Part shown: positions 5,650-51,100 of the stretch, piece after piece
Numbering within the stretch: the first letter of the stretch is position 1
Layout of the letters: each line of letters opens with the position of its first letter
From: Mytilus edulis
Lineage: Eukaryota
Direction: 5' to 3'
DNA length: 64,000 nt
Assembly (NCBI RefSeq): GCF_963676685.1
Contig: NC_092355.1
Span: 18,042,001 to 18,106,000, forward strand
The notes under the pieces: model-generated
Told to the model about the DNA's origin: nothing
The model's input: only the letters and a program-made list of their open reading frames with translations
Database searches by the model: none
Translations under genes and position numbers: made by a program

Positions 5650-5732
5650 CTTATACCAGCACACCACAATAAACATTTAGAGAATGTTACTGGCAAAATA
5701 TCCCAAATTCCAACTCAGGGTAAAGCAATCGA
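5650..5732 (+). CDS. DCDC2: DCDC2-like exon: inter-DCX linker (LIPAHHNKHLENVTGKISQIPTQGKAI), phase 0 to 2; gene is 5'-partial in this window
   Basis: Polypyrimidine ttttcag acceptor and GA|gtatgt donor. Only one frame is open. It joins in frame to either 135-nt exon, and the peptide resembles the DCDC2 linker preceding the second DCX domain (recalled, not aligned). Confidence 0.8.
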
Positions 5733-13790: not shown

Positions 13791-13939
13791 CTTTCTATAA
13801 ATTTTGGGCTATGTCTAGTCACACAAACAAGCTTATATTCCTTTGGTGGGTCTGACATTTTAAAACCTTTGTGAAATATTCTGTCTAATTGTCCTTGAGT
13901 TCACCCACTAACACATATGATTAATTTCTTTTCTTTCAG

Positions 13940-14074
13940 TATCGTAGTAAATGGGCGCTTTACAGAAAGTGCAATTAAGGTTTGCCTTTTACCACACCAG
14001 CAGCATTCCTTTCATGAGACAGCTAAAGCCATAGCGGAAAAAGTTGCAGATAGTTTAAACTACCGGTGTGACGA
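13940..14074 (+). CDS. DCDC2: DCX domain N-half, alternative exon A (IVVNGRFTESAIKVCLLPHQQHSFHETAKAIAEKVADSLNYRCD)
   Basis: ttctttcag acceptor, GA|gtgagt donor, 135 nt, phase 2-2. Contains the DCX 'I.v..NG' motif. Confidence 0.85.
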
Positions 14075-14110
14075 GTGAGTAATTATCATTCATAAACTTG
14101 TTAATTTCAG

Positions 14111-14245
14111 AGTTTTCGTTAATGGGCAGGATATTGATAAGCCAACTACGGTTGGATTGTCTTATCGACAGTTGGAAAATATGACTGAGGCAATAAAGGT
14201 TGTTCACGAGGCCATTAGAGAGAAGCATCAGTATCGGGTCGATCA
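14111..14245 (+). CDS. DCDC2: DCX domain N-half, alternative exon B (VFVNGQDIDKPTTVGLSYRQLENMTEAIKVVHEAIREKHQYRVD)
   Basis: ttaatttcag acceptor, CA|gtaagt donor, 135 nt, phase 2-2. Colinear without gaps with exon A. Confidence 0.85.
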
Positions 14246-15997: not shown

Positions 15998-16156
15998 GAT
16001 CTGTGATTTAGAGGGACATGTTGTAACAGATGTTAACCAATTAGAAACTGGAGGACTTTACGTAGCCAAAAATTCCTATCACACATTCAAACCGGGTAGA
16101 TACGAACCTCATGGGCGTAAAAATATTATTGTTCCATTATCACCTAGAGACAAACA
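15998..16156 (+). CDS. DCDC2: DCX domain C-half (ICDLEGHVVTDVNQLETGGLYVAKNSYHTFKPGRY...)
   Basis: tttttag acceptor, CA|gtaagt donor, 159 nt, phase 2-2. Matches the DCX consensus 'ly.l.G..v.....l..g..YVA....F....Y'. Confidence 0.9.
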
Positions 16157-16466
16157 GTAAGTCTATTATTTTGTTTATATTGCAAGAAAGCTGGTAAATT
16201 TAAACTAATTGTAAAGTATATAAGTCTGTGAAATTAGAATCTAACAATACAGCCGAAGATCAAACTGATGGATTGTTTTTAGTATTATAATTTACTAATA
16301 CATTAAAATAACCCTTAAAGCTAAAAGATGGGTCTGAGACCAATATGTAAAGCAAATCTAAAATAGAATAAATTTAACAGTTTGAAGAAATTCAGTGTTG
16401 ACTTGTGAGTAAAGATAGGCAATTATAATACTACAAGATATTAAATATTAAATCTTTCTTTTTCAG

Positions 16467-44264: not shown

Positions 44265-45121
44265 TTTATTCAATAATGATATATTTTCAACAAGGGTGAG
44301 TAGACTTATCAACAAAACGTCTCATTTATCTTAAATCAATGTTTTATATTTATGGATCATGAAAAATTAAATAAGATATTAAAAATTTCATGTAAAAAAC
44401 AGGACATACGTAGCCATGACCAAAAGATAAAAAACATGACATGAAAAGACAAACAGTCATACCACATCTTCTTTTTTTATAAGTATAGTGAACAAAGCAC
44501 TAAAAACACAAGATTGAGCAACATATACAACAAACCTCAACTAAAAGAAACACTGCCTCTGATATCAAATAAAAATATCCTCTTAAAATATTAAGTTTGG
44601 AAATCATTTTACAGATATGGTGAAAAAACTGAATGGAGGTATAAAAAAAACACTATATCATTTAAACCGAAAACACACACTCATTGGCAATATGATATTA
44701 TGAAAATTGTTAAAACTGGTTTTCACTGAAGACAGATATTGTATATCAGGTCATTTTCTTGTAGGCTTTATTTTTTTTTCTCTATAAAACAAGCAAGTTA
44801 TCTGCGCTTATATCTAATTAATAATTATCTAAAGTTCTTATTTAATTTTCCTTTGAAATGTTAAAATCAAAATCCTGTCCAATCTTATTGAGTTGAAATG
44901 CTCAAGAAAATAGCTGATATATAGTATTTACCACATGTGTATTTGGATATGGGATTACACATTTGAATATACAGTAATTGCAAATCACATTCAGATATTG
45001 CTTCAGCATACACTGTTTACTGCAAGTGGTTTTTTAAATCTATAATTTTATCAATTACATCTCTGTATAGGTAAGTGTCTGTTTTTGACATTGCTGTTAA
45101 ATATACATTCTTTTTCCAAAG

Positions 45122-48100
45122 GCTGCAACAAAAATACAGGCCAACTACAGAGGTCACCAGGCCAGAAAAGAGGTCAACGACTTAAAGACAAAGAAGGAAA
45201 CAGATGAAAAAAAGAAGAAAGAAGATGAGCTGAGAGCCAAAGCAGCCAAAGAGGAAAATCAAGCTGCAACAAAGATTCAGGCAGGTTTCCGCGGCCATCA
45301 GGCTCGCAAGGAAATCAACCAGAAAAAACAGGTACGTGATGTGAAAAATACAAAAGAAGACGCAGCTGCAATTAAAATTCAATCGAGTTATCGTGGTCAC
45401 AAAGCTCGAAAAGAAATTGCAGATAAAAAGGTAAAAAGAACAGAGAAGAATACAGAAGAAGAAGTTGCTGTTACGAAAATCCAGGCAGGATTCCGCGGAC
45501 ACAAAGCTCGGCAGGAAATAAATCAAAAGAAACAGCAAAGGACAGAAACGAAAAATGAAGAGGAGAAAGCTGCGACTAAAATACAAGCAGGATTCCGTGG
45601 AAATCAAGCGAGGAAAGAAATAGATCTAAAAAAGAAAGAAAAAGTAAAAAATGAAGAAGAAGAAAAAGCTGCAACAAAAATACAAGCTGGTTTCAGAGGA
45701 CACCAAGCAAGAAAAGAAGTGAAAAAGAAAAAGGTATTTTGTGATAATCATGATAAACAGTTGTCTAACAATTTACTTAATGTAGATGATCTTGCTGAAA
45801 ATGGTGAATTTAATGAACAAAGTGAAAGTACAAAATCTGTTAAAATATTAGCTCAAATAGAAAGTACAAATTCTCCTTCAATTTTAGATAAAAGTGAAAG
45901 TACAAAATCTCCCTCAAGGCTATCAAAAAGTGAAAGAACTAAATCTCATTTAAGTTTTTCAAAAAGCAATCTTTCAAGTCACAATGTTAATGATCAAATA
46001 GCTCCTTTAGATTCAAGTATGTCAAAAACTGTGTCTAACATATCCCAGAAAAGTAAACGTAGTAGAGGTGGAACACATGTTGATTTAAGGGAGAGTGAAG
46101 GGATTGGGACCAGTGTTGATTCATTTAGTCCAAAGGGGTACCAGTCTGATAGGGAAACTGTAAACAAAGAAGAGACTAAAGTTAGTGATGATATTAACCT
46201 TATAGAAAATCAAACTGAGGCTCAAAATGAGAGTTGTGATAAGACACTAAAAAAGGAAAATAGTCAAGGTAGCAATATTGTAGGATGTTCACTACAATCA
46301 TCTGAAAGCACAGTAGATTCTCATTGTGATGAAGTTAAACTTGATGGTAAGAATTCAATGGAAAATTTAACACTGTCACAGGAAAATAGTCAAAATTTAA
46401 GATTACCCATGGAATCAAGACAAAATGTAATATTTCCCAAGGAAAATAGTCAAAATTTAACATTGCCCAAGGAAAATAGTCAAAATTTAACATTGTCCAA
46501 GGAAAACAGTCAAAATTTAACATTGCCCAAGGAAAATAGTCAAAAATTAACATTGTCCAAGGAAAATAGTCAAAATTTAACAATGTCCAAAGAAAATAGT
46601 AAAATTTTAACAATATCTAAGGAAAAGAGTCAAGATATAACATTGTCCAAGGAAAATAGTCAAACACTGATATTGTCAAAAGAAAATAGTAAACATTTAT
46701 CAAAGTCAAAGGAAGAGAGTGTACCTTTGATGTTACCCAAGCAAAATAGCCAAATTGTAATATCGCATAAGGAAAACAAACCAGACTTAAAACTACCTAA
46801 ACTGCTATCATGTAAAGCTGTCACGTTTGTTGATGATAAAAAAATGCACATCAAAAGGTCTTCATTCAATTTAGACCCTTTAATACCAGCAAATATAGAA
46901 GATATAAAACTTGCTCTTAGACGTTCAAAAACTTTTGGTAAAATGAGTGACTTGAGAATACAGAATTTAGAAGTTTTGAATAATTCAAGATTGCCTATAG
47001 TTATTTTACCCAAATCTTTGTCTTTTGCTGAGGACAGTTTAAAATGTGACAAGCTCGGGACAATTGAGAAAACAGACAATGGCAACTTAGACTCAAGTCG
47101 GTGTAAGAGTGCTGAAGCAATTCCAGCTTTCCTTGGGTCTATGATCAAGCATCATACTTTTCCAGAAATGTTGGAATCCGATATGGAAAAGATGTTTCCT
47201 ATTTTCGTTGCTAGGTCTAAACGTCATAAAAGTTTTCCATATTTTGAAGTTAGAAAATCTGACAATTCAAACATGGAAGGGCTAAGGTCTGCCACTGACA
47301 GCCAGGCTAGTGAACCACTTGACGGGGACGACTTTATTGATACTGACTTACATACACGATCCCCAGGGGATGGGGAGAGTCTGACAGTCAATTTTGAATA
47401 TGATAATAGTGGTAGAATGGAGGTTGATAGTCGGTGTGGAAAATTATCAAACTTAGGCCACTTGGGTAGTTTTGGGGACTCTGATACTCTAGATACTGAA
47501 TCTATCTTGAAAACAAGCAGAACTGGTACCTTTGATGAAAGTGTTGAAATTGATTGGAAAAAGAAAGATACCAGTTTATTGAGAGAAATTGAAGATGAAA
47601 GTATAGAGTTAGAATTGATTAAAATAAAACACTCGGCCACTACATATCTTCAGGCAGGGGTCAAAGGTCATTTGTCTAGGTCTTATGCTGTTCAGAAAAT
47701 GAAATTTCAGAATAATTCTGACGAAGTGACTGTTCTCCAAGCAGCAGTTAGGGGTATGATTTTACGTAAGCATCTTGAATTTCATACTTTTGATGATGAC
47801 ACAGAGGTTGAAGCAATTTGTCAGAATGATGCTGCAGTCAAAATTCAAGCCGTGTTTAGAGGTTATAGGGTTAGGAAAATGGATAAGGTCAGAATTCAAG
47901 ACAAAAAGCTCCATGTGAAAAAACAGGTAACTTTTGGTTCAGTTTCAAGAATTGAAATAATAAATGGGGAATGTAAAAGAGATCTGACAGTTATAGGAAA
48001 AGAAATTGAAGATGAAGACTCTGTGATAAAAAAAATCAATGAAGACTTTGAAGGCACTAAAACAATCCCAGATGACAAAGAAAAACAAACACCAATTTCA

Positions 48101-51100
48101 ATTGAAAATACAACAGCAACACAAATTCAAATAGCATACAGAAAGCATAAGAAAACAAAAACAGAACAAAAACTTAGTTTTATTGAAAATGCAGCAGCAA
48201 CGAAAATTCAAAATGCATACAAAAAGCATAAAGGGAACAAAACTGAACCAAAACCAAGTCTAATTGAAAATGCAGCGGCAACGAAAATCCAAATTGCATA
48301 CAAAAAGCATAAGCAGTACCAAACAAAACGAGAACTTAGTTTAAATCAAAATGCAGCTGCAGCTAAGATTCAGAAAGCATACAAAAGCCACAAAAGGAAC
48401 AAAACTGAAAATAAAGCAGCAACCAAAATTCAAAATGCATACAAAAAGCATAAACAAAACACAACTGAACCAAAACGAAGTTTGATTGAAAATGCAGCAG
48501 CAACCAAAATTCAAAATGCATATAGAAAGTATACACTGAACAAAACTGAACAACAATATGTAGTCTGTACCATTATACAAGCTTCTTGCCATGCCTACTT
48601 AAGTAGAAAGAAGGGATTTGATTGGCTTAAACAAAATGAAAAATCAGATGACACATTAGCAATTATTAGGAAAAACTTTAAATCAAAACATCTTTGTAAA
48701 CAAGAAAGTGAAAATTGGGAAAAGGAAGTTATTGACTCAGCTGTGACTGATGTACAAAATGTACACAGCAAGCAACTAAAAACAGAAGATCAGTCTTTAT
48801 ACAAATCCAAAGCAGCAGTTATTATTCAGAAACACTTCAGGGGCTTTCATATCAGGAAGGGCTATGTTAAACAGAGGGAAAGGGCAGATTGGGCTTCAAG
48901 GATAATTCAGAGAGCTTTCAAACAGTTGATTCTTAAAAAAGAACTAGAAAGAAAGGAGAAAGCAGCAACTGTGATTCAATCAAAATATAAGGGTTTTATA
49001 GCAAGAAAGCAATACAGAAAACAAAAAGAAAAGAAAGAAAAGGCAAAAGTTTTGATTCTGAAATCTTTGAAAGCTTGGTTAGTATTTAAGAAACATGTGA
49101 AAAAGACTGAAGCAGTTACTGCTCTTTCTGCAAGTGTAAGAGGTAAAATTTCACGTTTAAATCACAGGACAAAAATGGATGAACAAAAGGCAGCTAAAGT
49201 CATTCAAACAGCATTTAAAAAATATAGGTCCAACTTAGAAATGATTAAACATGATTTAAATGTAGAGGCTATTGATGTGGTTGGTTTGATTATTGGTTCT
49301 TCGTACAGTTGTTACGAAAGGCAAGTGGAACATGAAATTGAGGTCAGAGATTCTGCTGCTGTGGTAATTCAGTCCCATTTCAAAGGTTATAGGTCGAGGG
49401 TCAAATATCAACATATGAAAAGAGAAGCTGCTGCTATTGTTATTCAGTCACAGTATAAGGGTCATAGGTCAAGGGTGAATTACAAACATATTAAAAGTGA
49501 ATCTGCTGCCATGGTAATTCAGTCAAAGGTTGAATGTGAAATCAAGCAGAAGGCTGCAATTTTAATTCAGTCCCAATTCAGAGGGTTCAGGTCAAGGGTC
49601 AAGGTCACAAAAAAGAAGCTTGAAAATTCTGCTACAGTCCTCCAGGCTGCATTTAGAGGAAAGCTATGTAGAGAACAAATAAGTAAGGATGAAAAATTCC
49701 TAGCAAAAGCATGTAAAGTCTCTAAAGACCAGCATCATTCTGCTGTGAAGGTTAATTTTACAAAGTCAAAAAATAAACCACAACTTACAGAAAAAAGGTT
49801 AAATGCAGCAATAACAACACTTCAGGCTGCGTACGCAGCACACCAGACTCGCGTACAATACAAAAAACAATTCAGAGAGATCAACCCAGATAGCGCTCGT
49901 TATTTGATTTCAGCACTAGAAGGTGTCTTATCACAACAGAATGATACATGTAACATTTCAATTGATTTAGAGGATAAAAAGGGGGAACATTGTAGAAATA
50001 GTGTAAGTGTTTCAAGTTCATTAGAATCTGGTTTTGTGACTGGTCGAAGTGAATCTAAGGAGGCTGAAGGTTTGTCAGATTTTAAAATTGTGCCATATCC
50101 CTTTGAGGACAAGGCTGAGGTTGATAACCTACATGATAATCCAGATTCCAAACTGTCATCTGCTAAGCTACCAATATTTGATTCAGCAAGTGTGACTTTA
50201 AGTTCTGAAACCAAATCAAAGCTAAAAAGTCCTAGAAGTAATGATAGGTCCAATCACATGTCCAGCAAACCTGTTTATAAAGTGGCTAAGTCATTTACTA
50301 GAAGTATTGATAAATTAAGTGTAATTAAAGAAGAAAACCCACCTCCCAAAAGAGAAATAGTGAGTGAGAGTAGTAAACATGACCTTGAAAATGAAACTAA
50401 ATTGTCTACAGAAAACACTGACAAGCAAATAAGTAAAGAAAATAAACAAGAATGTGAAAATCAAAATACAAATGAGAATGAAAAATCAGTTTCTCTAGAT
50501 TTGGAGCTGCTAAAAATTGAACAAGATGTTACTATCTCAACTGATACAGTTGATACAGGTATCAATAAACAAAATCAAAGTGAAGTAAGTCAGAATGAAG
50601 TTAAACCAAATAAAAGTGCACATGAAGCTGCAGTTGTCATACAAGCTTCATATAAAGCTCATAGGGCAAATATTGAAAAGGAAAAATTAGAAATTCCCAA
50701 TACAATTATTATTTTAAAAAATCAGCAAAATAAAAATTCAATGTTTAGTGTTGATTCAATTGAGTATTACATACACAGTCACTTGCAAGCAACTGTTCGA
50801 GGATATTTAAGTAGGGTGGGTCTTGTTAATTATGGGGCATTAAATTATCGTCCTTCTGTAAAATCTAAGCAAAAAGAAACTATATGGTTCGTTTCCAAAC
50901 TTAACTCAATTCAAAATGGTGGTGGTAGAATTCATAAGGTTAAGGATAGGGATAGAAATAACAAATACTTCAATGAATTTCAGACAAAACGATTGGACGG
51001 AAAAACAGAAGCTATAACTGCCATACAGGCTGCAGCTCGGGGTTTCTTAGTTCGTAGACGAATAGAGAAGCGTGAAAACACTAGACAGTTACTGACTCTT

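What the first reader, a model, noticed from the sequence alone, without database searches (positions are those of the whole stretch)
13940..14245. Mutually exclusive exon pair that swaps half of a doublecortin domain
Seen: two exons of exactly 135 nt, both phase 2-2 with good GT/AG sites, align without gaps (12 of 44 residues identical by hand count, including VNG and YR.D). They are separated by only 36 nt, and retaining that spacer gives GAG TGA, an immediate stop. Known: such short spacers sterically block splicing of neighbouring exons to each other, a classic mechanism of mutual exclusivity, and DCX domains bind microtubules. Inference: an old exon duplication gives two versions of the second DCX domain with different surfaces, possibly tissue-specific (for example cilia versus sperm or neurons). 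I do not know of this in vertebrate DCDC2.
Basis: partly seen in the sequence, partly recalled or inferred. Interest (0 to 1): 0.9.

Follow-up and report, generated by a model that had tools for sequence, protein, structure and literature searches.

The report
Mutually exclusive exons in mussel DCDC2-like
A mussel (Mytilus) gene for a protein with two doublecortin domains and IQ motifs holds two tandem 135-base copies of one exon and uses one or the other, which swaps the first half of its second microtubule-binding domain. The pair is real, but this is an ordinary kind of alternative splicing and both forms are already in RefSeq.

Summary
Exon A (13940-14074) and exon B (14111-14245) are both 135 nt and in the same phase. 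Both have AG/GT sites and lie 36 nt apart; reading through the spacer gives GAG TGA. Their peptides align without gaps (12/44 identical; z 6.3; 0 of 20,000 shuffles reach the score).

The genome is a Mytilus. The gene is M. galloprovincialis LOC143054256, named "doublecortin domain-containing protein 2-like" in M. trossulus and M. californianus. Of 58 public proteins fetched, 10 carry exon A only and 43 exon B only. None carries both, and no full-length protein lacks both. Exon-A isoforms are annotated in all three species and in an older, separate M. galloprovincialis annotation.

A or B plus the constant next exon forms the second DCX domain. Pfam and AlphaFold2 give both versions the same β-β-α-β-β layout. 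The only branch-point-like site for exon B lies 17 nt from exon A's donor, which fits classical steric exclusion.

Verdict: a real new member of a known kind, undescribed in the papers searched and of low to moderate interest. The scan has noted similar exon pairs in other genes of this genome.

The parts
5650..5732 (+). Constant upstream coding exon (LIPAHHNKHLENVTGKISQIPTQGKAI, ends with 2 bases of a codon); donor gtatgt
   Evidence: sequence; tblastn of RefSeq isoform P0051 residues 133-161; present in all full-length isoforms
13911..13911 (+). Candidate branch-point A for exon A (CTAAC, 29 nt before the acceptor), followed by a 16/20 pyrimidine tract
   Evidence: Pattern scan; inference only
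13940..14074 (+). Exon A, 135 nt; encodes IVVNGRFTES...NYRCD, the β1-β2-α1 half of DCX domain 2
   Evidence: Found in 10 public proteins (M. galloprovincialis X2, X8, X11, X17 and VDI53607-9; M. trossulus X4, X7; M. californianus X2). AF2 model
14075..14110 (+). 36-nt spacer: exon A donor gtgagt, an in-frame TGA on read-through, the only branch-point-like site for exon B (TTCAT, A at 14092), and exon B acceptor ttcag
14111..14245 (+). Exon B, 135 nt; encodes VFVNGQDIDK...QYRVD, the alternative β1-β2-α1 half of DCX domain 2; donor gtaagt
   Evidence: Found in 43 public proteins, including a protein from a 1,857-nt Logan contig (P0015). AF2 model
15998..16158 (+). Constant downstream exon: C-terminal half of DCX domain 2 (ICDLEGHVVTDVNQLETGGLYVA...)
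   Evidence: Pfam DCX 23.3 bits, profile 32-55/60; own-genome DCX scan

Best explanation
An old tandem duplication of a 171-nt unit (one exon plus minimal splice-site flanks) left two homologous 135-nt exons inside a Mytilus gene. The gene encodes DCX-DCX, a disordered linker and about 8 IQ motifs. Each mRNA takes exon A or exon B, so the protein gets one of two versions of β1-β2-α1 of its second doublecortin domain, joined to a constant β3-β5 half. A cannot be spliced to B: the intron between them is 36 nt, and B's only branch-point-like site lies 17 nt from A's donor. U1 on that donor and U2 on that branch point therefore exclude each other. Keeping the spacer gives an immediate stop. Shown: the anatomy, the homology, alternative and never joint use in annotated isoforms of three species, and DCX-compatible sequence and predicted fold for both versions. 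Inferred: the steric mechanism, that the two versions differ in microtubule or partner binding, and what decides between A and B. Exon A has the better branch point and pyrimidine tract, while exon B appears in more annotated isoforms.
For: Anatomy and phases. Homology beyond chance, with the codon-position pattern of two long-constrained coding copies. Each exon's best non-self match in 116 kb is the other, full length and ungapped. RefSeq and ENA isoforms: 10 with A only, 43 with B only, 0 with both, and no full-length protein with neither. X10 and X11 of M. galloprovincialis have the same length (855 aa), align without gaps there and swap exactly this segment; M. trossulus X3/X4 swap it likewise. 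Exon A is 44/44 identical in M. californianus and M. trossulus and 43/44 in M. galloprovincialis. Exon B is 44/44, 43/44 and 44/44 in the same order. The disordered middle of the protein is only 146/171 between M. californianus and M. galloprovincialis. Pfam DCX runs across the exon junction in fragments that hold only domain 2: 25.6 bits with B, 21.7 bits with A. AF2 gives the same β-β-α-β-β layout at residues 148-220 in both isoforms, matching domain 1. Both models match di-ubiquitin over about 215 columns, i.e. two ubiquitin-like domains. Branch-point and pyrimidine scan. Published steric criterion (donor to branch point under 50 bp; 9% of human clusters): PMC5740500.
Against: Isoform models are annotation products, though from three separate RefSeq runs and one other pipeline. 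The A version of domain 2 scores 21.7 bits, just under Pfam's cut-off of 22, and has lower pLDDT (62-78 against 70-82). In the structure comparison, domain 2 aligned only to generic ubiquitin-like folds (Z 7-8), because the DCX chains aligned to domain 1. The AF2 alignments held both A and B rows, so the two models are not independent. Conservation was seen only within one genus, where its power is low. Double inclusion or double skipping would stay in frame, so nonsense-mediated decay cannot explain their absence. The steric explanation covers only A-to-B joining, not skipping of both.
Confidence: 0.8

Rival explanations
1. Exon A is a rarely used or non-functional leftover of the duplication. 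The exon-A isoforms reflect low-level splicing noise picked up by annotation pipelines, and only exon B matters.
For: B-type proteins outnumber A-type 43 to 10. The one protein from a Logan contig has B (P0015). A scores slightly worse against Pfam DCX and in pLDDT. No short exon-A fragments were found in the large protein collection.
Against: Third codon positions are saturated between A and B, yet A keeps an open frame, the exact length, both splice sites, a consensus CTAAC branch point and the stronger pyrimidine tract. By my rough estimate a 45-codon frame stays open by chance about 2% of the time at this base composition. A is 98-100% identical across four Mytilus taxa, whereas the linker is about 85-92%. 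A-isoforms appear in three species and two pipelines and combine with two different first exons. Isoform counts are not expression levels.
Confidence: 0.08
2. The pair is mutually exclusive, but something other than steric hindrance enforces it, such as competing RNA structures or tissue-specific splicing factors. The short spacer is only a relic of the duplication.
For: Steric hindrance cannot explain why skipping of both exons is not annotated, nor how A or B is chosen. Competing RNA structures are a known alternative for tandem-duplicated exons (PMC6071210, listed). Most human clusters show no steric signature.
Against: A 36-nt intron with a branch-point-like site 17 nt from the donor is well below the published 50-nt limit, so A-to-B splicing should fail whatever else acts. 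I did not look for selector or docking sequences, and had no cross-species DNA to do so.
Confidence: 0.1
3. Both exons can be included together, giving a domain 2 with a doubled N-terminal half, and annotation has missed it.
For: Joint inclusion would stay in frame (135 nt each) if the 36-nt spacer were removed.
Against: None of 53 informative proteins has both. The spacer is shorter than introns known to be spliced in animals (my knowledge). Retaining it gives a stop at once.
Confidence: 0.02

Closest known systems
Mutually exclusive exon clusters born by tandem exon duplication (criteria of Pillmann/Hatje/Kollmar; human atlas PMC5740500)
   Same: Adjacent exons of identical length, same reading frame, recognisable sequence similarity, and alternative use in transcripts. 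The subset with a donor to branch-point distance under 50 bp (9% of human clusters) has the same proposed mechanism.
   Different: This is a mollusc gene that I found in no paper. The exon lengths are divisible by three, so frame incompatibility cannot help. Validation here rests on annotated isoforms, not on junction reads.
alpha-tropomyosin exons 2/3 (Smith and Nadal-Ginard 1989; cited from my own knowledge, not read here)
   Same: The branch point of the downstream alternative exon lies too close to the donor of the upstream one, so the two cannot be spliced to each other.
   Different: There the whole intron is longer and the branch point is unusually distant from its acceptor. Here the whole intron is only 36 nt.
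FGFR2 IIIb/IIIc and Dscam exon 4/6 type half-domain swaps (my own knowledge)
   Same: Alternative homologous exons replace half of a compact β-rich domain and keep the other half, which changes binding specificity.
   Different: Those swap immunoglobulin-domain halves of receptors with proven changes in ligand specificity. Here a ubiquitin-like DCX domain is swapped, and no functional difference has been shown.
Vertebrate DCDC2 / DCDC2B / DCDC2C (tandem-DCX ciliary and flagellar microtubule proteins)
   Same: Two N-terminal DCX domains followed by a long low-complexity tail. RefSeq names the Mytilus proteins DCDC2-like or DCDC2C-like.
   Different: The Mytilus protein adds about 8 IQ motifs, which to my knowledge vertebrate DCDC2 lacks. 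I did not test orthology. Whether vertebrate genes have such an exon pair was not tested.

Membership tests
Mutually exclusive exon cluster (tandem exon duplication type) | Neighbouring internal exons of equal or similar length in the same reading frame | tested here: met
   135 and 135 nt, both begin with 1 base and end with 2 bases of a split codon, 36 nt apart
Mutually exclusive exon cluster (tandem exon duplication type) | Sequence similarity between the exons beyond chance | tested here: met
   12/44 identical, ungapped, z 6.3, 0/20,000 shuffles; reciprocal best full-length hits in 116 kb
Mutually exclusive exon cluster (tandem exon duplication type) | One and only one of the exons in each transcript | tested here: met
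   At the level of annotated or assembled proteins: 10 with A only, 43 with B only, 0 with both, and no full-length protein with neither.
Steric-interference subtype | Distance from the upstream exon's donor to the downstream exon's branch point under about 50 nt | tested here: met
   The whole intron is 36 nt and the only yUnAy site at a usable distance is A14092, 17 nt from the donor; criterion from PMC5740500. The branch point itself is predicted, not mapped
Doublecortin domain (Pfam PF03607) | Match to the family profile over the curated cut-off (22 bits) for domain 2 | tested here: inconclusive
   B version 25.6 bits (profile 8-55), which passes. A version 21.7 bits (profile 5-55), just under. 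The constant half alone scores 23.3 bits
Doublecortin domain (Pfam PF03607) | Ubiquitin-like β-grasp fold | tested here: met
   AF2 gives β-β-α-β-β at 148-220 in both isoforms. Domain 2 aligns to ubiquitin-like folds at Z 7-8 over 68-79 aligned residues, rmsd 2.2-3.8 Å. Both models match di-ubiquitin. Middling scores and a shallow alignment
Doublecortin domain (Pfam PF03607) | Binds microtubules | not testable with these tools
   Needs a binding assay
DCDC2 orthologue | Reciprocal best match or phylogenetic placement with vertebrate DCDC2 | not tested
   Only the RefSeq names. Searches returned almost no relatives outside Mytilus

The most novel reading that the evidence does not exclude
The gene is a combinatorial generator of tandem-DCX modules. 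Three alternative first coding exons each encode a complete, different DCX domain 1, and two alternative N-terminal halves exist for DCX domain 2. That gives up to six microtubule-binding heads on one IQ/calmodulin-binding tail; five are already annotated. They might be deployed in different microtubule arrays (gill cilia, sperm flagella, neurons) to read different lattice types. I know of no DCX-family gene described as working this way.
Probability: 0.2. Interest if true: 0.5.

Novelty: new member of a known kind. Interest (0 to 1): 0.25.

Why it matters
It adds a clean invertebrate example of a half-domain swap made by exon duplication, with an unusually short 36-nt spacer that makes the steric mechanism easy to test. 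With the three alternative first exons for DCX domain 1, it suggests that mussels diversify one microtubule- and calmodulin-binding protein at both DCX domains. That could interest people who study how DCX domains read microtubule lattices in cilia and flagella. It changes no principle, and the isoforms are already in public annotation.

Tried and rejected

Conservation outside Mytilus:
- A search of 1.84 billion representatives with the constant exon found only Mytilus, one tardigrade protein whose model lacks the N-terminal half, one 49-aa Logan fragment, and one unrelated repeat protein.
- The word-index searches returned only Mytilus.
- A search for short exon-A fragments found nothing.
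- Two metagenome scans found nothing; one search was a size slip.

These blanks say little, because the queries were short and the tools are limited.

Other checks:
- Pfam on single exons A and B gave no DCX hit, as expected for 44 residues.
- There is no third exon copy nearby or elsewhere in the genome.
- Literature searches for DCDC2 or doublecortin with mutually exclusive exons, and for Mytilus with doublecortin, found nothing relevant.
- I built and searched no joined spliced model of my own. Exons were searched one by one by reference, and whole-isoform work used public proteins returned by the tools.
- Rejected as chance: the shuffle test and the isoform data rule it out.

Full report
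**What is in the sequence.** One search shows two exon-like blocks of exactly 135 nt. Exon A is 13940-14074, with acceptor tttctttcag and donor gtgagt. Exon B is 14111-14245, with acceptor taatttcag and donor gtaagt. The spacer is 36 nt, and reading from exon A into it gives GAG TGA.

Both exons begin with the last base and end with the first two bases of a split codon. This fits the upstream exon ending at 5732 and the downstream exon starting at 15998.

The two peptides align without gaps and share 12 of 44 residues. The ungapped BLOSUM62 score of 48 lies 6.3 standard deviations above shuffled controls, and 0 of 20,000 shuffles reach it. Identity by codon position is 22, 24 and 15 of 44. Synonymous positions are therefore saturated while the first two positions are kept, as expected for an old duplication with both copies held under coding constraint.

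In 116 kb of local sequence each exon's best non-self match is the other, full length. Neither has another copy in the 1.37-Gb genome.

**Which gene it is.** The window is G000:C12:18042001-18106000. The constant downstream exon matches Pfam DCX positions 32-55 of 60 (23.3 bits). A search of protein representatives with that exon returned proteins identical over the exon from Mytilus. They belong to M. galloprovincialis LOC143054256 (at least 31 isoforms) and to "doublecortin domain-containing protein 2-like" of M. trossulus and M. californianus.

The protein has DCX domain 1, DCX domain 2, a long low-complexity stretch and about 8 IQ motifs. It places domain 1 and one small common exon upstream of the window.

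**Are the exons used alternatively?** I scored residues 110-260 of an exon-B isoform against the 90%-identity protein clusters. Isoforms came out either 99-100% identical or 77-78% identical. The alignment shows that the 77-78% group carries exon A in place of exon B, at the same position and with the same length.

I classified all 58 proteins fetched:
- **Exon A only, 10 proteins:** M. galloprovincialis X2, X8, X11, X17 and VDI53607-9; M. trossulus X4, X7; M. californianus X2.
- **Exon B only, 43 proteins:** these include a 574-aa protein from a 1,857-nt Logan contig, which is almost all coding and so probably a spliced transcript.
- **Both exons:** none.
- **Neither exon:** 5 proteins, which are unrelated hits or fragments that do not cover this region.

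M. galloprovincialis X10 and X11 have the same length (855 aa), align without gaps there and swap exactly this segment; M. trossulus X3/X4 swap it likewise. To my knowledge RefSeq makes alternative isoforms only from transcript evidence, and here three separate annotation runs and one other pipeline agree.

**Conservation.**

| Exon | M. californianus | M. trossulus | M. galloprovincialis |
|---|---|---|---|
| A | 44/44 | 44/44 | 43/44 |
| B | 44/44 | 43/44 | 44/44 |

These counts are against the window's translations. The disordered middle of the same protein is only 146/171 identical between M. californianus and M. galloprovincialis. This fits purifying selection on both exons, but the genus is too shallow for a strong test.

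The age of the pair beyond the genus is therefore inferred only from the A/B divergence.

**What the exons encode.** Fragments that contain only domain 2 match Pfam DCX across the exon junction. The B version scores 25.6 bits (profile 8-55) and the A version 21.7 bits (profile 5-55), against a cut-off of 22.

AlphaFold2 models of the counterpart isoforms X11 (A) and X10 (B) give the same elements in domain 2: β 148-154, β 163-167, helix 175-190, β 196-199 and β 216-220. These mirror domain 1. The pLDDT is 62-78 for A and 70-82 for B. So A or B supplies β1-β2-α1 and the constant exon supplies the rest.

Foldseek puts solved DCX domains on top, and both models match di-ubiquitin over about 215 columns, that is, two ubiquitin-like domains. 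In the second-look alignment the DCX chains align to domain 1 (Z 13-15.6), and domain 2 aligns only to generic ubiquitin-like folds (Z 7-8).

Two caveats apply. The alignments were shallow and held both A and B rows. The Z values for domain 2 are middling.

**Mechanism.** The intron between A and B is 36 nt. The only branch-point-like site before exon B is TTCAT with its A at 14092, which is 19 nt before the acceptor and 17 nt after exon A's donor. The human atlas of mutually exclusive exons uses a donor to branch-point distance under 50 bp as its criterion for steric interference, and finds it in 9% of clusters (PMC5740500). The classical case is alpha-tropomyosin exons 2/3 (my knowledge).

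So A-to-B splicing should be impossible, and retaining the spacer gives a stop. Both exons are divisible by three, so frame incompatibility plays no part. Nothing here explains why skipping of both is not seen.

Exon A has the better signals (CTAAC at -29, 16/20 pyrimidines) and exon B the weaker ones (13/20). How the choice is made is unknown.

The stretch upstream of exon A and the 3' part of the spacer share a motif: TTAATTTC at the acceptor end, with scattered matches further 5' in the gapped alignment. This suggests that the 171-nt duplicated unit carried its own minimal splice-site flanks, and that the spacer is the original junction. That is an inference from a short AT-rich match.

**Comparison and verdict.** This meets every sequence criterion for a mutually exclusive exon cluster made by tandem exon duplication, of the steric subtype. 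The half-domain swap resembles FGFR2 IIIb/IIIc or Dscam in principle. I found no paper on it, but both forms are in RefSeq.

Other notes of this scan describe similar exon pairs in other genes of the same genome. Follow-up agents judged one such pair (CROT, s1-834645) and a related alternative-last-exon locus (s1-832259) to be ordinary and already annotated. My reading agrees with theirs, but it rests on my own tests.

It is a new member of a known kind, and the interest is low to moderate. The more unusual point is outside the window. The same gene has three alternative first coding exons, each encoding a whole, different DCX domain 1. Together with A/B they could give up to six DCX heads.

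Noticed in passing
Upstream of the window: L001:5200-5535 (C12:17995200), L002:7138-7437 (C12:18017138), L004:5965-6267 (C12:18025965); common acceptor at L003:2164/2165: There are three alternative first coding exons. Each starts with ATG and encodes a complete but different DCX domain 1 (Pfam 63-71 bits; pairwise 33/84, 29/76 and 44/94 identical). Each ends in the same phase with a GT donor and joins the same small exon. All three are used in RefSeq isoforms, and the combinations D1+A, D1+B, D2+B, D3+A and D3+B are annotated.
   Followed up: partly
window 45119-48232: An older M. galloprovincialis model (VDI53613.1, P0010) reads about 1,038 residues straight through this stretch. RefSeq isoforms use only 45122-45736 (the IQ repeats) and then splice on.
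   Followed up: no
Between window 16158 and 26719 (not located): A 13-residue cassette (RSTFG[RG]P[SG]DYRRP) is present in some isoforms and absent in others (alignment A1, columns 270-282).
   Followed up: no
Isoforms X22 (M. trossulus) and X29/X30 (M. galloprovincialis); 3' part of the gene: Some isoforms end in an alternative tail of proline-rich GDNKPPA repeats instead of the IQ motifs. These isoforms lack the calmodulin-binding part.
   Followed up: no
IQ region of P0008, residues about 410-580 (window about 45122-45736): The IQ repeats give weak sequence matches to the axonemal proteins CFAP91 (E 7e-6) and sperm surface protein Sp17 (E 0.0025) in solved cilia and flagella structures. This hints at a ciliary or flagellar role, but it may only reflect the shared IQ motif.
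   Followed up: no
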